This document shows positions 1,412 through 58,245 of a stretch of DNA of 64,000 nucleotides, in pieces; positions within the stretch are counted from its first letter, which is position 1, and each line of letters begins with the position of its first letter. A program made the position numbers and the translations under genes. Location: positions 124,001-188,000 of the IMG/VR virus record IMGVR_UViG_3300020154_000003; one strand, given 5' to 3'. Under the pieces are notes generated by a model that worked only from the letters and a program-made list of their open reading frames with translations, did not search any database and was not told the origin of the DNA.

Positions 1412-1486
1412 CCTTTGGTAGCTTAAGCTGGTTAAAGCCCATGACTGATCCTCATGGAGATGGTTGTTCGAATCGGCCCCAAAGGA
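1412..1486 (+). tRNA. tRNA-Ile(GAT), atypical C37/C38, no encoded CCA
   Basis: Cloverleaf: acceptor CCTTTGG/CCAAAGG, D stem GCTT/AAGC, anticodon stem CATGA/TCATG with loop CTGATCC, T arm GGTTG-TTCGAAT-CGGCC. Confidence 0.75.
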
Positions 1487-1493
1487 CTTAAAA

Positions 1494-1573
1494 CCTCGTG
1501 TAGCTTAGTGGTCTAAAGCAGCATACTTATAATATGCCTATCGTCTTAAACGGTTCGAATCCTACCACGAGGA
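1494..1573 (+). tRNA. tRNA-Ile(TAT)-like gene with a disrupted/inserted T stem
   Basis: Acceptor CCTCGTG/CACGAGG, anticodon stem GCATA/TATGC with loop CTTATAA, T loop GGTTCGAATCC. The 5' T strand is GT-CTTAAAC-GG instead of the GTAGG needed to pair with CCTAC. Confidence 0.65.
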
Positions 1574-1585
1574 CTTTAAAAAAAT

Positions 1586-1658
1586 GAGAGTATGGCTCAG
1601 TGGTTAGAGCAAGGACTTCTAAACTCCTAGGTCGTGGGTTCGAATCCCACTACTCTCT
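1586..1658 (+). tRNA. amber suppressor tRNA (anticodon CTA at 1619-1621)
   Basis: Acceptor GAGAGTA/TACTCTC, D stem GCTC/GAGC, anticodon stem AGGAC/CTCCT (C.C mismatch at 31-39) with loop TTCTAAA, variable loop AGGTC, T arm GTGGG-TTCGAAT-CCCAC. Confidence 0.8.
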
Positions 1659-1677
1659 CTCAATAAAATAAAAAGTT

Positions 1678-9325: not shown

Positions 9326-10204
9326 TTACCACATTACTGGTATTAAGTTTCTCAAAAAATCTTTATCCTGAGTGAAAATAGGTGGCTCAACGACTTGCCA
9401 AGTATTTCTCTTGATATAGTACTGGCCAACCCTTTCCAAATTCGGATGTTGATCATCATCTATCAACCATTTAACATTATCTGCAGTTTTAGGATTTTTC
9501 AAAGCAAGTTTGGCACGATCTTCGGGAAGTGCAACCCATGTCTCTTGTTTAAGAATTACCCTTCCTCTTTTTTGACCTACCGGATAATCATTCCAGTTCT
9601 GACCCTTTTTCCAAATCAGGTCTTGAAGTTGATCAGTGCTCTTCCCATTCAATTCCTTGTGTGAATATAGTGATTGAGCAACGGCCTGAATGGAGTTTCT
9701 GGTTGCATCTTGCTGCCTCCAAATGAAGTAATTAATGACTTCCTCTGATGGTGGAATGGTAAATAACCTGCTGTCAAACATTGCTGTTTTAAAATTTTCA
9801 ATATCCTCTGCAATCGGTATTAAGGCAGTTTCCTTAAACCAACGAGCAAGTCGTAATTGATTGAATTTAGCGGTAGCGAGACTCGATGAAATGGATGCCA
9901 TTTTCTGAACGTTACCATCAAACCATGCTGAGGTGGTTGTCTTTTCAAAATCACTCAATAGAATCGAAATTTCATCTGACTGGACATAACCAAATTTGGC
10001 TCCTTGAATGTTATCACAGAGATATTTTGTGGTTTCATCCATATCCTTAATTAAGTCCGCATCGAATGGTCGCTTAAGTCCACGAGTATAGGTGTGAAAT
10101 GCCTTCCCATCGATCCTTATCATTGTATAGGTTCTTCTAGGAAGATAGGTTCTACTTCTATCCTCATAATAGGTTTTCATTCTGTCGCCAAGTTCATCTT
10201 TCAT
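9326..10204 (-). CDS. thg1: tRNA(His) guanylyltransferase Thg1 / Thg1-like 3'-5' polymerase
   Basis: RIDGKAFHTYT, YVQSDEIS, FDSR, YFIWRQQDATRNS. Confidence 0.93.
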   Translation of the reverse strand: MKDELGDRMKTYYEDRSRTYLPRRTYTMIRIDGKAFHTYTRGLKRPFDADLIKDMDETTKYLCDNIQGAKFGYVQSDEISILLSDFEKTTTSAWFDGNVQKMASISSSLATAKFNQLRLARWFKETALIPIAEDIENFKTAMFDSRLFTIPPSEEVINYFIWRQQDATRNSIQAVAQSLYSHKELNGKSTDQLQDLIWKKGQNWNDYPVGQKRGRVILKQETWVALPEDRAKLALKNPKTADNVKWLIDDDQHPNLERVGQYYIKRNTWQVVEPPIFTQDKDFLRNLIPVMW

Positions 10205-10503
10205 GATTCAAAATATTTTTTGTAAAAATACGAATAATTTAAATAATATCATATATTTGCCATGTGAAGCACACAAATTTCATCAAAGATAATGAAGTAC
10301 TACTTAAAGTTGACTTTATTTTTGAGCCAATCAAGGAAATTTCGGCTGTAATTAGGATTAAAGACTGTTTATATCGAGTTGAAAAATTTTGTGATGATTT
10401 CCCCGGACATCCAAATGCACATATACGACACGTCTTTCTAATAGATTGTGAACAATTTTAAAACAAAAACAAGAACTTTACGTAAAATTCATAAATCCCC
10501 ACA

Positions 10504-11379
10504 ATGACACTAATATTAGACCTCACCAAAGGAGTCACCGAAACCACAGCATACAAAGCATGGAAATTTCCGGGTGGCGAAATTCACTTCAAGTTCTCAG
10601 ATGAATTTATACGTTGGCTAAATTCTCACAGATCGCTCGAAATTCAGACCAGAATAAACACCTCAGATGATTTTCTGTTTTTACTTCTAGTAATTGATAC
10701 GTTGAAGAAGGATTATCAGAATCACACCATCGATGTTTTCATCCCTTATATGCTTTACCAGCAAGCAGATAGAGATTTCAGTGTTGGCGAATGTTTTAGT
10801 CTCAGAACTGTAACCAAAATTCTGAATGCCATTGGTGTAAATTCATACACGATTTACGATCCCCACTCAGATGTTACTCCAGCTTTACTTCAGAACTGTA
10901 AGGTTATCGACAATAGCGATTACATCAAATGGGTGCTTGAGCAACTACCTTCATTAGGTAAATATTCCAATGGATTCAACGTTGTTATGCTTTCCCCCGA
11001 TGCTGGTGCATATAAGAAAATCTATAAACTCGCCAATAAAATTCAATTCAAGGGTGAGGTTGCGTCAGCCAATAAATCTCGTTCGATTTCAACTGGAAAT
11101 ATAGACTCATTGGAACTGTCGAAACATGATTTCGAAGGTAAGGATGTGTTGATTGTTGATGACATCTGTATCGGTGGTAGAACCTTTATTGAACTAGCAA
11201 AGAAGTTGAAGGAACGGAATGTTGGTGATTTATATCTCGCAATTTCTCACGGCATTTTTAGTAACGGATATGATGAACTAAGTCTCTACTACAAAAAGGT
11301 ATTCACTACTAACAGTAGAAAAAATGAATACAATCACGAATTAATTTCAACCTTTAACATTTTTGGCGATAATGACTGA
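10504..11379 (+). CDS. ribose-phosphate pyrophosphokinase-like protein (candidate NARP1 Adps)
   Basis: FPGGEIH, PYMLYQQADR, DPHSDV, SPDAGA, IVDDICIGGRTF, HGIFS. Confidence 0.88.
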   Translation: MTLILDLTKGVTETTAYKAWKFPGGEIHFKFSDEFIRWLNSHRSLEIQTRINTSDDFLFLLLVIDTLKKDYQNHTIDVFIPYMLYQQADRDFSVGECFSLRTVTKILNAIGVNSYTIYDPHSDVTPALLQNCKVIDNSDYIKWVLEQLPSLGKYSNGFNVVMLSPDAGAYKKIYKLANKIQFKGEVASANKSRSISTGNIDSLELSKHDFEGKDVLIVDDICIGGRTFIELAKKLKERNVGDLYLAISHGIFSNGYDELSLYYKKVFTTNSRKNEYNHELISTFNIFGDND

Positions 11380-11791
11380 TAGTTCGTTAGATACATTTTT
11401 CGATATTAAAACTTGTATTGATAGACTTTACTGCGAGTGGAAGAAACATCCCAAATTAATTATCGCTGTCGATTTCGATGACACGGTTTTTGATTTCCAT
11501 AATAGAAATCAAGTTCATGATAATGTGATTAATCTCCTTCATGAATGTAAAAAAGAAGGTTTCTACATTGTCGTATTCACAGCATCCAAGCCTGAACGCT
11601 ATGACTTCATAAAGGACTACATGGAAATGAAGGGTATCGAAATTGATGGCATTAATAAAAATGTTATCGAACTTCCTTACGGCAATAACGGAAAGATATA
11701 CTACAACATTTTATTGGATGACCGTGCTGGCTTATTTCAAGCTGTTACTATTCTCACTAGCGTTTTATTTAAAATACGAAACAAAGCATGA
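11372..11791 (+). CDS. HAD-superfamily phosphatase-like protein
   Basis: IIAVDFDDTV, FTAS, K..Y..LLDDRAG. Confidence 0.75.
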   Translation: MTDSSLDTFFDIKTCIDRLYCEWKKHPKLIIAVDFDDTVFDFHNRNQVHDNVINLLHECKKEGFYIVVFTASKPERYDFIKDYMEMKGIEIDGINKNVIELPYGNNGKIYYNILLDDRAGLFQAVTILTSVLFKIRNKA

Positions 11792-12213
11792 TAGTATTTG
11801 TGGCGACTCCATTTTGGAGTTTTGATAAAGAAGTGTCTGAACGAAGAACTGCGATAATAAGCAAGTATTGCGGGCAATTATTGCGTGAGGGTATTATGTG
11901 TACTTCGCCAGTTGTTTTTGGAGTAACTATACTGAAATATACTGACCTACCGGGAAATTTTGCCTTTTGGGATAAACTTAGTTTTACCACTTTGGCAGCT
12001 TCAGATGTGCTACACGTACTTATGCTCCCCGGATGGGATGAATCGAGAGGCGTTAGTGAGGAAATAAAATTCGCACTAGAAAGAAAAATACCAATAAAAT
12101 ATTTTGATGTTTCCGAAGATAGATATGGCAGTCCCACTTTCAAAGAAAATAGCAGATCAATAGCTATTGGCAACCTAATAAGAAAAATTAATCATAAAAA
12201 AAATAACCCATGA
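11788..12213 (+). CDS. DUF1937 / nucleoside 2-deoxyribosyltransferase-like protein
   Basis: VATPF...SPV...FW...LMLPGWDESRGVSEEIKFA. Confidence 0.7.
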   Translation: MIVFVATPFWSFDKEVSERRTAIISKYCGQLLREGIMCTSPVVFGVTILKYTDLPGNFAFWDKLSFTTLAASDVLHVLMLPGWDESRGVSEEIKFALERKIPIKYFDVSEDRYGSPTFKENSRSIAIGNLIRKINHKKNNP

Positions 12214-13781
12214 AAATGAATCCATTTTTAATGGCTGACTTTTACAAGATCGGTCACCCATTTCAATACCCCAAAGGTACAAATCTTGTTTATGCTAACT
12301 TAACACCACGTAATTCCAGAATCAAGGGAGTTGACAAGATGGTGTTCTTTGGCCTTCAATATTTTATCAAGCATTACTTGATTAAGTATTTCAACGAAAA
12401 CTTCTTCGATCTTCCGAAAGACGAAGTGATGAATTCATACAGAAGAAGAATTCTCACCTCATTAGGTTCCGATCTACCTTATTATGATCACATTGCAAAT
12501 CTTCACGATTTGGGTTATCTCCCAATCGAGATTAAAGCTTTGCCAGAAGGAAGCAAGGTGAAGATGCGTGTGCCAGTACTGACTGTCAAAAATACACACC
12601 CTGAATTTTATTGGTTGACCAATTTCATAGAAACAATCATGTCCGATATTGTGTGGCAACCATGTACCTCCGCTACTATTGCCCACGAATACCGTAAACT
12701 TCTCAACAAGTTTGGTGAAGAAACTGGTATGCACCCCGACTTTATTCAATGGCAAGGTCACGACTTCAGCTTTAGAGGTATGAGTTCCTTCGAGAGTGCA
12801 TATACTTCAGCTATGGGGCACTTATTATCTTTTACTGGCACTGACACCATTCCGGGGATTGATGCTCTTGAAACGTATTACAATGCTAATGCGGATTACG
12901 AATTAATTGGTGGTAGTGTCAATGCTACCGAACACAGTGTTATGTGTGCTGGTGAAAAGGATTCAGAGTACGAGACTTACAGACGTTTGATCTGTGATGT
13001 ATACCCTAAAGGCATCGTATCAATTGTTTCAGATACTTGGGATTTATGGTTCGTACTAACTCAGATCATACCTCAATTGAAAGAAGCGATTCTCAATAGG
13101 GAAGGTAAGGTTGTTATTCGTCCTGACAGTGGCGATCCTGTTAAAATTCTTACAGGTTACTTCAAGAACGAATTGACTGTGATCGATGGCAAATATTACC
13201 GTAACACTGATGTTGATGCTCATGATATTGACGCAACTAAGCTAACGCTTAAAGCAGGTGCCAAAGAAGTTGGTGAAGCTGAAAGAAAAGGTGTTATTGA
13301 GGTTCTTTGGGACGTGTTTGGTGGAACCATCACTGACAAAGGTTACAAACTACTGGACGAACATATTGGGGCAATTTACGGTGACAGTATCACACTTACT
13401 CGTGCAGAAGAAATTTGTCAGCGATTGAAAGATAAGGGATTTGCTTCACAAGTTGTACTTGGTATCGGTAGCTACACTTATCAGTACAACACCAGAGATA
13501 CCTTTGGTACTGCAATGAAGTCTACCTATGTTGAAGTTAACGGTGAAGGAAGAGAAATTTTCAAATCTCCTGCGACTGATGATGGAACTAAAAAATCTGC
13601 CAGAGGCTTGCTGAAAGTTGTGAAAGATGAGGACGGTGAATTCGTACTTGTAGATCAGGTGTCTTGGGAAGAAGAGGCTGAGGGAGAATTAACACCAGTC
13701 TTTAAGGATGGTAAGTTACTTGTTGACCAGTCATTGAGCGAAATAAGGGCAAGATTGAGTGAAGTAGTAGAGGTAGTATAA
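12210..13781 (+). CDS. nicotinamide phosphoribosyltransferase-like protein (candidate NARP1 Namat)
   Basis: ADFYKIGH..QYP, HDFSFRG, ATEHSVM, SIVSDTWD, IRPDSGDP, IYGDSIT, K.P.TD.G.KKSARG. Confidence 0.92.
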   Translation: MKMNPFLMADFYKIGHPFQYPKGTNLVYANLTPRNSRIKGVDKMVFFGLQYFIKHYLIKYFNENFFDLPKDEVMNSYRRRILTSLGSDLPYYDHIANLHDLGYLPIEIKALPEGSKVKMRVPVLTVKNTHPEFYWLTNFIETIMSDIVWQPCTSATIAHEYRKLLNKFGEETGMHPDFIQWQGHDFSFRGMSSFESAYTSAMGHLLSFTGTDTIPGIDALETYYNANADYELIGGSVNATEHSVMCAGEKDSEYETYRRLICDVYPKGIVSIVSDTWDLWFVLTQIIPQLKEAILNREGKVVIRPDSGDPVKILTGYFKNELTVIDGKYYRNTDVDAHDIDATKLTLKAGAKEVGEAERKGVIEVLWDVFGGTITDKGYKLLDEHIGAIYGDSITLTRAEEICQRLKDKGFASQVVLGIGSYTYQYNTRDTFGTAMKSTYVEVNGEGREIFKSPATDDGTKKSARGLLKVVKDEDGEFVLVDQVSWEEEAEGELTPVFKDGKLLVDQSLSEIRARLSEVVEVV

Positions 13782-13782
13782 T

Positions 13783-14208
13783 TTGAAAGGCGAAGATAGA
13801 TTAGATTTAAATCAGTTACTGAAAGGTTACCCAAAATGTGATCTTTTGGTGACTGATTTTTTTGGAGTTGAGGATAAGAACGAAATCCATTTCAGGGATT
13901 TATATGATTTTTTTGATAAGTACGATTACCATCCCACTGTTGAACACTATTATCGTAACGAAAACGCATATTGGGTTCACAATATAATGAACCCTTCGCA
14001 CCTACCAGTAAGTAAACAAAAAGAATTTAAGTATAGGAAAGATGCTGAACTGCAGATGTTTATACTCTCATTCCATAATATGGAGGAAATATTAACTCCA
14101 TTGGAACCACATTATAGAACTGACACAACATCAAACTTTGGATTTTATAATTATGGCGATAATGACGCTAACCAAAACACTACTGACTTTACGGAATTGC
14201 CTTTCTGA
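13783..14208 (+). CDS. hypothetical protein
   Basis: ORF directly after the NAMPT-like gene. Confidence 0.55.
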   Translation: MKGEDRLDLNQLLKGYPKCDLLVTDFFGVEDKNEIHFRDLYDFFDKYDYHPTVEHYYRNENAYWVHNIMNPSHLPVSKQKEFKYRKDAELQMFILSFHNMEEILTPLEPHYRTDTTSNFGFYNYGDNDANQNTTDFTELPF

Positions 14209-14545
14209 CGATCTTCTCAAACCAAAATATAGAAATCGGTATCGACCAATTAAAAGCACTGGTCATTGCTATGTCGCCTCTGAAGCAGTATATTATTTGG
14301 TTGGAAAGAAATTAGGATATAAACCACATTACGTTAAAATTAATGGTGATACCCATTGGTTTTTAATGACAGACAATGGAGTGGACATACTCGATCCCAC
14401 GTATGATCAATTTCCCTCATTACCAAATTATAGTTCAGGAAAGCGGTGTGGATTTTTAACAAAAAAGCCATCAAAAAGATGTAAAATTTTGTTGAAAAAG
14501 ATAAAAAGTTTAAATTTGAATAATGGACAAAGTAAACGAAATTGA
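14138..14545 (+). CDS. conserved phage hypothetical protein with C/H/D residues (true start probably downstream)
   Basis: GHCYVASEA...HWFL...ILDPT..QF...GFLTKKPSKR. Confidence 0.6.
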   Translation: MDFIIMAIMTLTKTLLTLRNCLSDDLLKPKYRNRYRPIKSTGHCYVASEAVYYLVGKKLGYKPHYVKINGDTHWFLMTDNGVDILDPTYDQFPSLPNYSSGKRCGFLTKKPSKRCKILLKKIKSLNLNNGQSKRN

Positions 14546-14933
14546 ACAACCTTCCTCATTGGAGAGTTGTTTTGAATATCTGGATAAGAAATTAGTCGAT
14601 AAAGACTTATTTAAAAACTCACCAGAAAATAAAGTGCTTGGAATGTGCCACTTTTCCTTGGGAATGTGGATGAGAAATAATTGGTATCTCTGGTGGAGTG
14701 AAGATTTGGCAAAGCAATTTGCTGAGAAGGGTTACCCACAAGAAAAACCTCTTCTAGTAAAATACTTCAATGAAGAGTTAGGGATATTTCATGCTGATGA
14801 TATGAGTAGCATTATCATAACTTCGTATCATAGAAAACTTAATGACCTCACCTTACGTCTTGACCTGCAGGCTAAGAAATATCAAGATTTCTGGCAAAAT
14901 AGTGTCGATAAAAAATTGATGGATGAAGAATAA
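14523..14933 (+). CDS. DUF6794-like protein
   Basis: HFSLGMWMRNNW.LW...GIFHADDMSSII...YHRKLN. Confidence 0.55.
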   Translation: MDKVNEIEQPSSLESCFEYLDKKLVDKDLFKNSPENKVLGMCHFSLGMWMRNNWYLWWSEDLAKQFAEKGYPQEKPLLVKYFNEELGIFHADDMSSIIITSYHRKLNDLTLRLDLQAKKYQDFWQNSVDKKLMDEE

Positions 14934-15552
14934 AATATCATACATATTAATACTCTTATTAGTAATATTAACTTCCTTTAATTCAAAACCAGCAACTGGT
15001 TGTCTCGAACTCGATTTAATTCTCATCGGGGATTACTCGTCCAGTTTAAGGGGTCAAGAACATTATTTTGTAGGTGCATGTAGAACATTCGTTAAGAAAT
15101 TTCAATTATCTGAACAAACAATCAAAATTGGTATAGTAACCTTTAATGATACTGCAAAACTAATCAGTCCTTTAAGTAGTGATACTTCCTTTATCACTAG
15201 CAGAATTAATGAGTTGGCTGAAGAAATAGGTGAAGATTGGACTAATATGGAGAAAGGATTATTCGTGGCTTTTAATGAGTTCACAAATAACGGCAGACCA
15301 AATGCACAGAAAATGATTATAATCCTTTCTGACGGTGCAGTCAACGATCCGGGCGATAAAACTTCAGCACCCATAACTACGATGGAAATTATTCAACAAC
15401 TTAGAATGACTGGTATGGGTGTGTGTAGCATCTTAATTAAGAGCGGTGAAGAGGAACCAGAATTCATGAAAGCGATTTCATCAGGATGTTACGCAGAATC
15501 TAGCTACGAAAATCTAGCAATCGAATTGGCTAAATTAGATGTTTGTCTCTAA
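14923..15552 (+). CDS. exported vWA domain protein
   Basis: N-terminal signal-like hydrophobic segment; DYSSS, TNM, LSDG. Confidence 0.8.
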   Translation: MKNKISYILILLLVILTSFNSKPATGCLELDLILIGDYSSSLRGQEHYFVGACRTFVKKFQLSEQTIKIGIVTFNDTAKLISPLSSDTSFITSRINELAEEIGEDWTNMEKGLFVAFNEFTNNGRPNAQKMIIILSDGAVNDPGDKTSAPITTMEIIQQLRMTGMGVCSILIKSGEEEPEFMKAISSGCYAESSYENLAIELAKLDVCL

Positions 15553-37311: not shown

Positions 37312-38181
37312 TTATTCAGGGACTGACATATAAACGTCTTCCATTATACTATGAGTGTAACCACGTCTAAGGGTATAATTTGGTACTTCATTCTTACCGA
37401 TTAGCACGGCTTTCCAAGTGATATTCCCCTCTGAATCTTTGTAAAGTTTCACGTCCATACCGTCAAAATAATTTGCAAGTTCTTGAGCGGGATTGTTAGT
37501 ACAAAACTCTTCAAAGAATGCGTAAAAGTCACAAAGGGTATTTCTGTTTTCCAAAGTATCGGGAATCATTTTTGCAGCCATACGGTAACCGTATCTATGG
37601 AGGTCAGCAATTTTGCGGAAACTCACAGACTTTTTATAATCTTCCCCGTATTGTCTTTCATCTTCATAGTTAGTATCGGGTGAAAATTGTTTCACCTTAT
37701 TCCAGTACTCAGATATTTGATCTTCCAAGTCATAGTCATTTGTCGGACGTTGTTTCGGTACGTTGCTTTCCAGCGTTGAACCAAACTGAGTATTCCCGCA
37801 TTCAATAGATTCTTGAATCATGTCTTGAGTCGTTAACCTCATTAGTTCAGCATTTGAATAGCGATAGTTACGACCTTGCAGCCTATTCCATACTCCGAGC
37901 GTATTGATATAATACCACATTGCGCCCATTGCAGCCATTTCGCCCCCTACATTCATTGCATAGTCCCCGCGAAAGTATTTGTTTGAATATTCATGACTAT
38001 GTTCAAACACGTCATGAAAAATTCCAGTACCACCCCAAAATGCATTGAATGACGAACCTGAATGGTTATTGTCATAGGTATCTTTGTGCGCTAAACCATA
38101 TTCACCAGTTGCATCGTCACAAAAGAACGTCAATTCGACTTTTTTAACTAACCGTTTCATATTCTTTGTTGTTGTGTTCAT
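37312..38181 (-). CDS. hypothetical protein, possible HD/HExxH-like metal site
   Basis: FHDVFEH...GGEMAAMGA. Confidence 0.7.
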   Translation of the reverse strand: MNTTTKNMKRLVKKVELTFFCDDATGEYGLAHKDTYDNNHSGSSFNAFWGGTGIFHDVFEHSHEYSNKYFRGDYAMNVGGEMAAMGAMWYYINTLGVWNRLQGRNYRYSNAELMRLTTQDMIQESIECGNTQFGSTLESNVPKQRPTNDYDLEDQISEYWNKVKQFSPDTNYEDERQYGEDYKKSVSFRKIADLHRYGYRMAAKMIPDTLENRNTLCDFYAFFEEFCTNNPAQELANYFDGMDVKLYKDSEGNITWKAVLIGKNEVPNYTLRRGYTHSIMEDVYMSVPE

Positions 38182-56611: not shown

Positions 56612-57208
56612 TCACTTTTTATAATCCCATCCAGTAAGGATGGCGTGTTTATGTTTTGCTTCCACCCAAGTTTTAGGGGATATAAACTTATCTAACCAAA
56701 AATCATCATAGGCCATACGCATTTGTTTTGCTGCTTGTCCGAAGGGCATTGCACCGACACCAGTACAGAATCCGCTCATTGTTATGGAATTAATATTACG
56801 GTCAGGAGCATATTCTTTTAGGGTTAGGAATACAGCACGGGCAGCGAGATAGGCATTCAATGTATCTGGAACGAACAATGGAATTCGCATTGTTGGGGCT
56901 ACGATACACCAAGGAATATCTGTATGAGTGGTATCCACCAGAATTGCTTGGCCAACCAAGAGTTCTCCACTATAATAGTTTCTTATTATGTTTTGAACTT
57001 TAGTTTGTAGTTGCCAACCGAATCTTTTTGAAATAACCAGATCAAGGCCACCATCCATATATCCGAACGAATTAGCGGGAGAAACGATACAATCTACTTT
57101 TTGGGAGAAGAAATCACCATGTATGACATTTACGTCATTTTCACCGTGGAATTCTTTTCTCCACATTTCGACCATTTCTTCGTTTCTATCTATTAGGTAG
57201 AACTTCAT
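56612..57208 (-). CDS. macrodomain (ADP-ribose processing) protein
   Basis: IVSPANSFGYMDGGLD, APTMR, GFCTGVG. Confidence 0.9.
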   Translation of the reverse strand: MKFYLIDRNEEMVEMWRKEFHGENDVNVIHGDFFSQKVDCIVSPANSFGYMDGGLDLVISKRFGWQLQTKVQNIIRNYYSGELLVGQAILVDTTHTDIPWCIVAPTMRIPLFVPDTLNAYLAARAVFLTLKEYAPDRNINSITMSGFCTGVGAMPFGQAAKQMRMAYDDFWLDKFISPKTWVEAKHKHAILTGWDYKK

Positions 57209-57819: not shown

Positions 57820-58245
57820 TTAAAACAATTCCAGTTTACTAGTGATTTCATCTACTTCATCTGACCATGCAGGCCCGATTGCGCAGCAGGTGATGGTTGG
57901 TACGCCATTAAACTCGGTCAGTCCTGCATCTTTAATTAAGGAACATGGTAATCCTTTCTGTCTTGCAGCCCCATAGAGTGCCATAATTTCTTCTTCGGTT
58001 TCGACCACACAGCAGATTTTGGTGAAGATACCTGTAATCCAGTTATGTATTGCACTTTCTTTATCCAAGGTCAATACCAAATTATCCCAATCATTAGCAC
58101 CTTTTACAAATTCACCAGAGTCAAGAATTGCCTTCAGGGATGCATGGGCACCTTGGCCGATATACTTTCCTTTTCTTGGGGTGACTTTCTTTCCATCGAC
58201 AACGAAGGATTTACGCATCACTATGACTTGTTTGCTTACTTTCAT
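57820..58245 (-). CDS. pth2: peptidyl-tRNA hydrolase Pth2
   Basis: KQVIVMRK...KGK..GQGAHAS...TKI...DAGLTEF...T.TCCAIGP...VDEITSKLEL. Confidence 0.9.
   Translation of the reverse strand: MKVSKQVIVMRKSFVVDGKKVTPRKGKYIGQGAHASLKAILDSGEFVKGANDWDNLVLTLDKESAIHNWITGIFTKICCVVETEEEIMALYGAARQKGLPCSLIKDAGLTEFNGVPTITCCAIGPAWSDEVDEITSKLELF

What the first reader, a model, noticed from the sequence alone, without database searches (positions are those of the whole stretch)
10504..13781. NARP1-like NAD+ reconstitution pair with two extra enzymes inserted
Seen: Prs-like and NAMPT-like genes in one overlapping operon, separated by a HAD phosphatase and a DUF1937/deoxyribosyltransferase-like gene; I recognised no NMNAT in the window. 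Established: the phage NARP1 pathway (Adps + Namat) rebuilds NAD+ from ADP-ribose and nicotinamide to counter NAD+-depleting defences. Inference: the two inserted genes, and the macrodomain at 56612, may widen the substrate range, for example to phospho-ADPR or ADPR-derived signals.
Basis: partly seen in the sequence, partly recalled or inferred. Interest (0 to 1): 0.6.

Follow-up and report, generated by a model that had tools for sequence, protein, structure and literature searches.

The report
Four-gene extended NAD+ rebuilding operon
A soil jumbo phage carries the known two-enzyme NARP1 pathway, which rebuilds NAD+ after bacterial defences destroy it. Two extra enzymes sit inside the operon (a small HAD phosphatase and a DUF1937 glycosidase-like protein), and both recur in NARP1 operons of many unrelated phages, so they are probably undescribed add-on modules of this counter-defence.

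Summary
Window 10504-13781 (+) holds four overlapping genes: Adps-like (291 aa), capless HAD phosphatase (139 aa), DUF1937/N-deoxyribosyltransferase-like (141 aa) and Namat-like (523 aa).

- **NARP1 core.** The last gene is a true Namat: 596 bits to the solved SPbetaL1 Namat, with the published adenine-clamp signature as GSYTYQYNTRD. The first keeps the catalytic Lys185 and most acceptor residues of the characterised ICP1 Adps, and scores below NCBIfam's PRPS cut-offs. The complete 366-kb genome has no NMNAT.
- **HAD.** It sits beside Adps and Namat in 28 of 39 homologue clusters (70% identity), in five gene orders, including cultured Bacillus, crAss-like and Vibrio phages. Two operons also carry the published Macro phosphatase Adpp, so HAD probably acts on a different phosphate. 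My favoured candidate is NADP-derived 2'-phospho-ADPR.
- **DUF1937.** Five of its eight nearest clusters lie inside Adps...Namat operons. It has an NDT/DNPH1/TIR-like fold and an invariant Glu.
- **Caveats.** Related jumbo phages carry HAD alone, or HAD plus DUF1937, without NARP1. The Macro gene at 56612-57208 is unlinked and is not Adpp-type. Substrates are inferred, not shown.

Verdict: a new variant of a known kind.

The parts
10264..10461 (+). Small upstream ORF (65 aa), function unknown. It may be the first gene of the transcription unit.
   Evidence: No Pfam or PHROG hit. Conserved in the same position in L016 (68% identity) and L007 (39%). Its membership in the operon is not shown.
10504..11379 (+). 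Adps: a PRPS-like ADP-ribose pyrophosphokinase (ADPR + ATP gives ADPR-PP + AMP).
   Evidence: phrog_619 at 9e-70. 34% identity to the biochemically and structurally characterised ICP1 Adps. Invariant F18, H121, D161, K185, D212, D213 and F221; F92 is conserved; R87 is Gln (PMC13586617). Below every NCBIfam PRPS cut-off (110.9 vs 113 for TIGR01251; equivalogs far below). Best solved PRPS scores only 66.7 bits.
11372..11791 (+). Capless (C0) HAD-superfamily phosphatase, a recurrent third gene of NARP1 operons.
   Evidence: Motifs D34-x-D36-D37-T38, T70-A71-S72, K108 and D116-D117. AF2 model with pLDDT 81. Nearest folds: BT0820 (Z 9.8), KdsC/YrbI (8.2), T4 Pnkp 3'-phosphatase (7.8), HisB-N and GmhB (about 7.4). 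Of 39 homologue clusters at 70% identity, 28 have Adps and Namat within 5 kb, in five gene orders. An alternative TTG start lies at 11363.
11788..12213 (+). DUF1937 / N-deoxyribosyltransferase-like (DrHyd/TIR-like fold) protein, a predicted N-glycosidase and second accessory gene.
   Evidence: PF09152 at 1e-8. AF2 model with pLDDT 93. Foldseek: 1T1J (TM 0.75-0.79), then NDTs, MilB, DNPH1 and TIR domains. Invariant G82, S86, G88 and E92 in 30 homologues. Five of the eight nearest clusters are embedded in Adps...Namat operons.
12210..13781 (+). Namat: nicotinamide ADP-ribose transferase (ADPR-PP + nicotinamide gives NAD+ + PPi).
   Evidence: E 4e-178 and 596 bits to PDB 9W5X/9W5W, the SPbetaL1 Namat. 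Carries the Namat-specific SCH signature GSxPhixPhixPhiTRD as GSYTYQYNTRD. It is the only NAPRTase-family gene in the genome. It has an insertion of about 40 aa (residues 317-355) relative to SPbetaL1 Namat.
13811..13867 (+). Terminator-like hairpin (20-bp stem plus T-run), the probable 3' end of the operon.
   Evidence: Consensus scan only. It begins 30 nt after the Namat stop. It lies inside the mechanically listed ORF 13783-14208, which is nevertheless conserved in L016 (85% aa identity, dN/dS 0.15).
56612..57208 (-). Macro-domain protein (198 aa). It was named in the finding, but no link to the operon could be shown.
   Evidence: PF01661 at 6e-12. It is the only Macro in the genome. Homologues are MacroD/'Appr-1-p processing' proteins of Rhizobium, Sinorhizobium, Gifsy-1 and jumbo phages. 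No similarity to Adpp (E 0.26 vs RYC Adpp). Neighbours include a PTH2 peptidyl-tRNA hydrolase.

Best explanation
This is an extended NARP1 counter-defence operon of a 366-kb soil jumbo phage. Established by homology: Adps pyrophosphorylates ADP-ribose to ADPR-PP, and Namat joins ADPR-PP to nicotinamide, rebuilding NAD+ from the products of NAD+-depleting defence systems. Inferred from gene linkage and fold: the two inserted, translationally coupled genes are accessory input enzymes that turn other NAD-derived products into NARP1 substrates. The HAD is a capless sugar- or nucleotide-phosphate phosphatase. Because it co-occurs with the ADPR-1''-P phosphatase Adpp in some operons, it most likely removes a different phosphate. 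My favoured substrate is 2'-phospho-ADPR, which TIR-type NAD(P)ases make from NADP+ (or NADP+ itself). The DUF1937 protein has the N-deoxyribosyltransferase/DNPH1/TIR-like fold and an invariant Glu in an S-x-G-V-x-x-E motif. It most likely hydrolyses an N-ribosyl bond in an NAD-derived molecule, for example N-linked cyclic ADPR or an ADPR-base or ADPR-amino-acid conjugate, releasing ADPR. That would parallel what RyDEP does for O-linked 2'/3'cADPR.
For: Namat identity. Adps identity: and PMC13586617. No NMNAT and only one NAPRT-family gene in a complete genome. Overlapping junctions and purifying selection. HAD catalytic motifs and fold. HAD-NARP1 linkage in five gene orders across crAss-like, Bastille-like Bacillus, T5-like Vibrio, Phass-1 and many IMG/VR phages. 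Background NARP1 frequency is about 4.3% of phages (PMC13586617). Adpp and HAD together in L040 and L085. DUF1937 in NARP1 operons with HAD (L016, L024, P0008 contig) and without HAD (L026-L028, L102). DUF1937 fold and invariant Glu. Precedents for accessory genes that feed NARP1: Adpp (bioRxiv 10.64898/2026.01.28.702374) and RyDEP (bioRxiv 10.64898/2026.05.28.727677), the latter also present in one phage and absent from a close relative. A defence TIR NADase converts NAD+ and NADP+ equally, to NAM plus ADPR(P) (PMC9097488). A TIR-fold cADPR hydrolase exists (PMC13455253, abstract).
Against: No biochemical data exist for any of the four proteins. The substrates of HAD and DUF1937 are inferred from context and fold only. 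In the same Thg1...DUF6794 slot, related jumbo phages carry HAD alone (L030; its complete genome has only a distant non-Namat NAPRT-family gene 45 kb away) or HAD plus DUF1937 without Adps or Namat nearby (L025). Both enzymes can therefore be kept without NARP1. The closest relative with 64-72% identical Adps and HAD (L007) lacks DUF1937. Most of the large DUF1937 family (4,181 representatives) has no known NARP1 link. Adps has Gln in place of the adenine-contacting Arg87. That E92 is equivalent to the catalytic Glu of NDT/DNPH1 rests on motif spacing recalled from memory and on fold similarity, not on a residue-level structural alignment.
Confidence: 0.6

Rival explanations
1. Independent enzymes in a variable accessory slot. 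HAD and DUF1937 do not feed NARP1. They act on their own, for example by degrading phosphorylated or N-ribosyl immune signals, converting NADP+ to NAD+, or hydrolysing (d)NMPs as DNPH1 does. They sit beside Adps and Namat because anti-defence and auxiliary genes accumulate in the same early-gene hotspot.
For: L030 has HAD only and L025 has HAD plus DUF1937 in the same Thg1...DUF6794 slot, without Adps or Namat. HAD lies 14 kb or more from the NAPRT-family gene in G002 and G003. Distant DUF1937 homologues in phiCbK-like and other phages have no NARP1 nearby. The P0012 homologue lies next to a dNMP-kinase-like gene.
Against: Linkage to Adps and Namat is kept through at least five different gene orders and in unrelated phage families, usually with overlapping or abutting ORFs. 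A hotspot confined to one lineage does not explain that. Acting alone and feeding NARP1 are also not exclusive: RyDEP does both.
Confidence: 0.2
2. By-product removal. The accessory enzymes relieve product inhibition rather than widen the input range. HAD would act as an AMP 5'-nucleotidase, or DUF1937 as an AMP/NMP N-glycosidase, removing the AMP that Adps releases.
For: AMP inhibits ICP1 Adps, leaving about 35% activity at 0.5 mM (PMC13586617). Relatives with the DNPH1/MilB/LOG-type fold hydrolyse nucleoside 5'-monophosphates. S86 corresponds by motif spacing to a phosphate-binding Ser of DNPH1 (recalled from memory, not tested).
Against: Host cells already turn over AMP through adenylate kinase. 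Most NARP1 operons work without either gene. Capless HADs usually take large or bis-phosphorylated substrates (nearest folds). This role would not explain retention of HAD or DUF1937 in phages lacking Adps (L025, L030).
Confidence: 0.12
3. Ordinary PRPP/NMN salvage. The pair is Prs plus Nampt, making PRPP and NMN, with the host NMNAT completing NAD+ synthesis (a NARP2-like logic). HAD and DUF1937 would then be nucleotide-salvage enzymes supplying ribose-5-phosphate or nicotinamide.
For: Both core proteins belong to the PRPS and NAMPT superfamilies. The Adps score is only just below the TIGR01251 cut-off. Namat retains NAM-PRPP catalysis in vitro (PMC12774641, section heading).
Against: The Namat-specific adenine clamp motif is present, and true Nampt-like proteins read GGGLLQK.NRD at that site. 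The protein is 55% identical to the crystallised SPbetaL1 Namat. Adps is closer to the characterised Adps proteins than to any solved PRPS. No phage NMNAT is present.
Confidence: 0.05

Closest known systems
NARP1 (Adps + Namat; Osterman et al., bioRxiv 10.1101/2024.02.11.579819; structures in PMC12774641 and PMC13586617)
   Same: Adjacent Adps and Namat homologues. The Namat SCH signature is present. The Adps catalytic Lys and most acceptor residues are conserved. No NMNAT is needed.
   Different: Two extra enzyme genes lie between Adps and Namat. Adps has Gln at the Arg87 position. Namat has an insertion of about 40 aa.
NARP1-AP (Adps-Adpp-Namat; Macro-domain ADPR-1''-P phosphatase; bioRxiv 10.64898/2026.01.28.702374)
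   Same: A phosphatase gene embedded in the NARP1 operon, and the concept of an input-widening accessory.
   Different: The phosphatase here is a HAD-fold enzyme, not a Macro domain. HAD and Adpp co-occur in L040 and L085, so they are probably not redundant. The window's own Macro gene is distant and not of the Adpp clade.
RyDEP-NARP1 (RyR-domain O-glycosidase converting 2'/3'cADPR to ADPR; bioRxiv 10.64898/2026.05.28.727677)
   Same: A small gene inserted in a NARP1 operon in some phages and absent from close relatives. It is a predicted glycosidase whose product could be ADPR.
   Different: The fold is unrelated (DrHyd/NDT/TIR-like rather than a RyR repeat). The predicted chemistry is N-glycosidic, not O-glycosidic. 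Activity is untested.
DNPH1/Rcl, nucleoside 2'-deoxyribosyltransferases, MilB, and uncharacterised PA1492 (PDB 1T1J)
   Same: Same fold, and an S-x-G-V-x-x-E motif with an invariant Glu.
   Different: Only 12-25% identity. No member of PF09152 has a known function. The substrate is unknown.
Capless HAD phosphatases: BT0820 (2OBB), KdsC/YrbI, T4 Pnkp 3'-phosphatase, HisB-N, GmhB
   Same: The four HAD motifs and a cap-less Rossmannoid core.
   Different: At most 20% identity. The NCBIfam BT0820 model scores 21 bits against a cut-off of 165, so this is a distinct, phage-borne, NARP1-linked family (phrog_1238, misnamed 'phosphoheptose isomerase').
NARP2 (Nampt + NMNAT/Nudix) and NARP3 (PnuC + NadR; PMC13464706)
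   Same: The goal is the same: restoring NAD+ during infection.
   Different: No NMNAT/CTP_transf_like domain is present in the genome, and the Namat signature is present instead of the Nampt pattern.

Membership tests
NARP1 | [quoted passage not shown] | tested here: met
   Both lie within one 3.3-kb overlapping gene string.
NARP1 / Namat | SCH selectivity-clamp signature GSxPhi1xPhi2xPhi3TRD with aromatic x residues (PMC12774641) | tested here: met
   The window has GSYTYQYNTRD. The same pattern occurs in the ICP1, SPbetaL1, PaP1, RYC and BPS13 Namats. It is absent from Nampt-like L099 and L101.
NARP1 / Namat | SCL loop supplying a third adenine-stacking residue | not tested
   The loop is variable by the authors' account, and I did not map it.
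NARP1 / Adps | Catalytic Lys185 and acceptor/donor residues of ICP1 Adps (PMC13586617) | tested here: met
   F18, F92, H121, D161, K185, D212, D213 and F221 are conserved. R87 is Gln. D216 is Ile, but D216 is also Ser in the characterised SPbetaL1 Adps.
NARP1 | ADPR-PP formation and ADPR-PP-dependent NAD+ synthesis | not testable with these tools
   Needs enzymology.
Canonical PRPS (Prs) | Score above the NCBIfam PRPS model cut-offs | tested here: not met
   TIGR01251 scores 110.9 against 113, and equivalog models score 35-100 bits against cut-offs of 296-536.
NARP1-AP | Adpp-type Macro gene within two genes of Adps/Namat | tested here: not met
   The only Macro gene is 43 kb away on the minus strand and is unrelated to Adpp at sequence level.
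NARP2 | Nampt together with a phage NMNAT | tested here: not met
   No PF01467 match in the complete genome; controls were 14 of 14 positive.
HAD phosphatase superfamily | Motifs I-IV (DxDxT, S/T, K, DD) on a Rossmannoid core | tested here: met
   D34/D36/T38, T70, K108 and D116-D117 are present. D34, D36, T38, K108 and D117 are invariant in 7 homologues. The fold is confirmed.
N-deoxyribosyltransferase / DrHyd superfamily (PF09152 DUF1937) | Fold, plus a conserved acidic catalytic residue after strand 4 | tested here: inconclusive
   Fold is met (1T1J TM 0.75-0.79; NDT, MilB and DNPH1 at probability about 1.0). E92 is invariant. Its positional equivalence to the NDT/DNPH1 nucleophile was not verified residue by residue.
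RyDEP | RyR Repeat12-like domain | not tested
   No Pfam RyR hit appeared among the operon ORFs scanned, but I made no dedicated search.

The most novel reading that the evidence does not exclude
HAD and DUF1937 define two new enzymatic entry branches into NARP1. In this reading the HAD recycles NADP-derived 2'-phospho-ADPR (or another phospho-ADPR that Adpp cannot handle). The DUF1937 protein would be the first phage N-glycosidase that destroys N-linked ADPR immune signals or conjugates, both silencing signalling and supplying ADPR for NAD+ resynthesis. It would also give PF09152, a family of more than 4,000 clusters, its first function.
Probability: 0.2. Interest if true: 0.85.

Novelty: new variant of a known kind. 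Interest (0 to 1): 0.64.

Why it matters
NAD+ depletion is among the commonest bacterial anti-phage strategies. Recent work shows the arms race proceeds by defences making altered cleavage products and phages adding accessory enzymes to NARP1, such as Adpp and RyDEP. The HAD gene described here is a frequent but, in the literature I could search, undescribed third NARP1 gene. It is present in cultured, tractable phages: Bacillus BPS13/W.Ph.-like phages, Bacteroides crAss-like DAC15, and Vibrio VPT02. Its co-occurrence with Adpp predicts a further class of phosphorylated NAD(P) breakdown product that matters in infection. The DUF1937 gene offers a functional context for a large family of unknown function. 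Both predictions can be tested directly with standard enzymology and defence-rescue assays.

Tried and rejected
- **Megablast of the locus against the phage collection:** no match, so I used protein-level searches.
- **"DUF1937 is a one-off insertion":** this was my interim conclusion after (L007 lacks it; L004 and L006 have no NARP1). I rejected it after the full HMMER search and context look-ups.
- **[quoted passage not shown]:** the host taxa looked disjoint in Table S1, but L040 and L085 carry both, so I rejected simple replacement.
- **Macro gene as part of the system:** no linkage and no Adpp similarity.
- **The search for related loci with the DUF1937 alignment:** failed, because the alignment has no conserved stretch long enough.
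- **Solved Adps structures:** not in the PDB copy, so I checked residues by alignment to the ICP1 gene.
- **Domain fusions of DUF1937 homologues:** uninformative, showing only ParB_N and tandem DUF1937.
- **Literature:** no paper mentions BT0820, DUF1937 together with NARP, or phospho-ADPR in anti-phage work.
- **ESM Atlas for ORF 13783-14208:** nothing usable.
- **Not run:** Complex prediction, because I make no binding claim, and read laying.
Full report
**What is there**

The window is bases 124001-188000 of a 366,038-bp virus record that CheckV rates as complete. It is found in soil metagenomes. On the + strand, four ORFs run head to tail: 10504-11379, 11372-11791, 11788-12213 and 12210-13781. 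Their junctions overlap by 8, 4 and 4 nt. Family scans name them as a PRPS-like protein, a weak HAD hydrolase (phrog_1238), a DUF1937/DUF4406 protein (phrog_355, 'nucleoside 2-deoxyribosyltransferase') and a NAPRTase/NAMPT_N protein. A 20-bp hairpin with a T-run starts 30 nt after the last stop.

**The core pair is NARP1, not Prs plus Nampt**

The 523-aa protein matches the crystallised SPbetaL1 Namat (9W5X/9W5W) at E 4e-178. It carries the Namat-specific selectivity-clamp helix signature GSxPhixPhixPhiTRD (PMC12774641) as GSYTYQYNTRD. In my alignment of about 80 NAMPT-family proteins, the characterised or operon-linked Namats of ICP1, SPbetaL1, PaP1, RYC, BPS13 and DAC15 share this pattern. 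Nampt-like proteins read GGGLLQK.NRD at the same site.

The 291-aa protein is 34% identical to ICP1 Adps, the enzyme whose structures and kinetics were published (PMC13586617). It keeps F18, F92, H121, D161, the catalytic K185, D212, D213 and F221. R87 is Gln. D216 is Ile, but that position is also not conserved in the active SPbetaL1 enzyme. The protein falls below all NCBIfam PRPS cut-offs and scores only 66.7 bits against the best solved PRPS.

The genome has no NMNAT-type domain, while all 14 control genomes were positive. It has a single NAPRT-family gene.

**The HAD gene is a recurrent third NARP1 gene**

The protein has all four HAD motifs. Its model is a cap-less HAD core (pLDDT 81). 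The closest solved folds are BT0820 (Z 9.8), KdsC/YrbI, the T4 Pnkp 3'-phosphatase, HisB-N and GmhB. All of these enzymes act on sugar phosphates, sugar bisphosphates or nucleotide phosphates.

Homologues occur in 92 phage records and 70 IMG/VR loci. An HMM survey of all fetched loci found these gene orders:

| Gene order | Loci |
|---|---|
| Adps-Namat-HAD | 36 |
| Adps-HAD-Namat | 19 |
| Namat-HAD-Adps | 2 |
| HAD-Namat-Adps | 2 |
| HAD-Adps-Namat | 1 |

After clustering the HADs at 70% identity there are 39 clusters. Of these, 28 have both core genes within 5 kb, 3 have one, and 8 have none. NARP1 occurs in only about 4.3% of phages (PMC13586617). Examples in cultured phages:

- Bacillus BPS13
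- Bacteroides crAss-like DAC15
- Vibrio VPT02
- Phass-1

The aRES/NARP1-AP preprint states that NARP1 operons sometimes hold extra genes, but it tabulates only Macro-domain neighbours. No paper I could search links a HAD to NARP1.

**HAD is not simply an Adpp substitute**

Table S1 of that preprint contains no Bacillus, Bacteroides, crAss-like, Ralstonia or Burkholderia phages, which at first suggested mutual exclusion. However, L040 and L085 read Adps-Adpp-HAD-Namat. Their inserted ORFs are true Adpp-clade Macro proteins (E 1e-15 and 1e-7, with shared motifs). Two phosphatases in one operon argues for different substrates.

A defence TIR NADase (SPARTA) cleaves NAD+ and NADP+ at similar rates, giving NAM and ADPR(P) (PMC9097488). 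2'-phospho-ADPR is therefore a real product that core NARP1 has no described way to use. That is why I rank it, or NADP+ itself, first. This step is inference.

**The DUF1937 gene is also a recurrent NARP1 insert, in a narrower clade**

The word search found only one relative (82% identity). Its 13.7-kb contig has the same Adps-HAD-DUF1937-Namat string and the same flanks. The full HMMER search found 4,181 family representatives. Contexts of the nearest clusters:

| Protein | Identity | Context |
|---|---|---|
| P0003 | 52% | Adps-HAD-DUF1937-88aa-Namat |
| P0005 | 41% | Adps-DUF1937-Namat, no HAD |
| P0008 | 43% | Adps-138aa-DUF1937-Namat on a 52-kb contig (no DNA held, so the 138-aa ORF is unverified) |
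| P0010 | 39% | Adps ... DUF1937, two PF15891 NDT-like genes ... Namat |
| P0006 | 42% | Beside a Nampt-like, non-Namat PRTase |
| P0004 | 46% | HAD plus DUF1937 only |
| P0012 | about 43% | 1.3-kb contig, uninformative |

More distant phage homologues show no NARP1 nearby.

The model (pLDDT 93) superposes on the uncharacterised 1T1J. Next come nucleoside 2'-deoxyribosyltransferases, MilB, DNPH1 and TIR domains. G82, S86, G88 and E92 are invariant. From memory, the S-x-G-V-x-x-E spacing matches the phosphate-binding Ser and nucleophilic Glu of DNPH1; I did not verify this residue by residue.

The RyDEP study gives an exact precedent for a gene inserted in one phage's NARP1 operon and missing from a near relative. 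A 2022 survey of viral NAD/ADPr systems reported only ARC-type DrHyd domains in viruses. The DUF1937-NARP1 link therefore appears not to have been noticed.

**Caveats from the jumbo-phage lineage itself**

The slot between a Thg1-like gene (minus strand) and a DUF6794 gene varies across relatives:

| Locus | Slot content |
|---|---|
| window, L016 | Adps-HAD-DUF1937-Namat |
| L024 | Adps-HAD-DUF1937-88aa-Namat |
| L007 | Adps-HAD-Namat |
| L025 | HAD-47aa-DUF1937 |
| L030 | HAD alone |

L030's complete 362.6-kb genome has only a distant NAPRT-family gene lacking the clamp motif, 45 kb away. L013 keeps a HAD next to a Namat remnant with a stop codon. HAD, and HAD plus DUF1937, can thus persist without NARP1. 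This supports either an autonomous benefit (for example signal destruction, or NADP+ to NAD+ conversion) or recent loss of the core genes.

AMP inhibits Adps, which gives a further rival role: by-product removal.

**The Macro gene**

ORF 56612-57208 (minus strand) is the genome's only Macro domain. It is of the MacroD/'Appr-1-p processing' type. It shows no similarity to Adpp and lies 43 kb from the operon, near a PTH2 gene. Such Macro domains can act on ADPR-1''-P in vitro, according to the literature cited in the aRES preprint. A role in trans cannot be excluded, but nothing here supports it.

**Verdict**

The locus is a genuine NARP1 operon extended by two accessory enzymes, both under purifying selection (dN/dS 0.02-0.07). 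That both are functionally tied to NARP1 is well supported for HAD and reasonably supported for DUF1937. Their substrates are hypotheses. The concept of an extended NARP1 is already known, but these two modules are not described in the literature I could search, so I rate it a new variant of a known kind.

Noticed in passing
window 1412-1659 (+): Three clustered tRNA genes: Ile(GAT), Ile(TAT) and a tRNA with anticodon CTA, which ARAGORN labels 'Pyl' and which would read TAG. It is a possible amber-suppressor tRNA, as seen in some huge phages with late-gene stop-codon recoding. I used only code 11, and the operon genes end in TGA or TAA.
   Followed up: no
window 9326-10204 (-): A Thg1-like tRNA-His guanylyltransferase (PF04446 at 2e-27; phrog_4717 at 1e-85), divergently oriented just upstream of the operon. 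It is conserved in that position in all related jumbo-phage loci (L007, L016, L024, L025, L030).
   Followed up: partly
window 12210-13781, Namat residues about 317-355: An insertion of about 40 residues relative to the crystallised SPbetaL1 Namat splits the alignment into two blocks. Relatives vary in length here: L007 Namat is 580 aa and L024 is 534 aa.
   Followed up: no
window 13783-14545 (+): Two small ORFs after Namat (141 and 135 aa; the second matches phrog_12251). Both are conserved in L016, and the second also in L024 directly after Namat. The first contains the terminator-like hairpin and has an unusually low dS (0.46, against 0.9-1.7 for its neighbours), which hints at a nucleotide-level constraint.
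   Followed up: partly
window 14523-15552 (+): A DUF6794 gene and a VWA-domain gene follow. DUF6794 marks the downstream border of the variable slot in all related jumbo phages.
   Followed up: partly
window 57820-58245 (-): A PTH2-type peptidyl-tRNA hydrolase gene lies two genes from the Macro-domain gene. Together with Thg1 and the tRNAs, it suggests a sizeable tRNA and translation repair toolkit.
   Followed up: no
L102 2291-3736 (also L103): Another phage's NARP1 operon holds a DUF1937 gene followed by two PF15891 (Nuc_deoxyri_tr2) genes between Adps and Namat. That makes three N-ribosyl-hydrolase-like genes in one NAD+ operon.
   Followed up: partly
L051-L091 (IMG/VR loci, Adps-Namat-HAD order): A large clade of operon-linked Namat-like proteins has a variant clamp helix (GAFCF[TH]AI, then an insertion of about 9 residues, then TRD) instead of the published consensus. 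Whether these proteins prefer ADPR-PP is unknown.
   Followed up: partly
L021 2896-3441 (Phage Phass-1): A gene annotated as nicotinamidase directly precedes Adps-Namat-HAD. This is odd, because nicotinamidase would consume the Namat substrate.
   Followed up: no
L013 / L100 (G004 37539-37748): A 71-aa Namat remnant with an in-frame TAA sits next to an intact HAD. This looks like decay of the core gene while the accessory gene is retained.
   Followed up: partly
G000 329254-329607 (-) and 264894-265175 (-), outside the window: Two Nudix-domain ORFs (284 and 149 aa) lie elsewhere in the genome. Either could act on ADPR or NAD-related nucleotides. I did not examine them.
   Followed up: no
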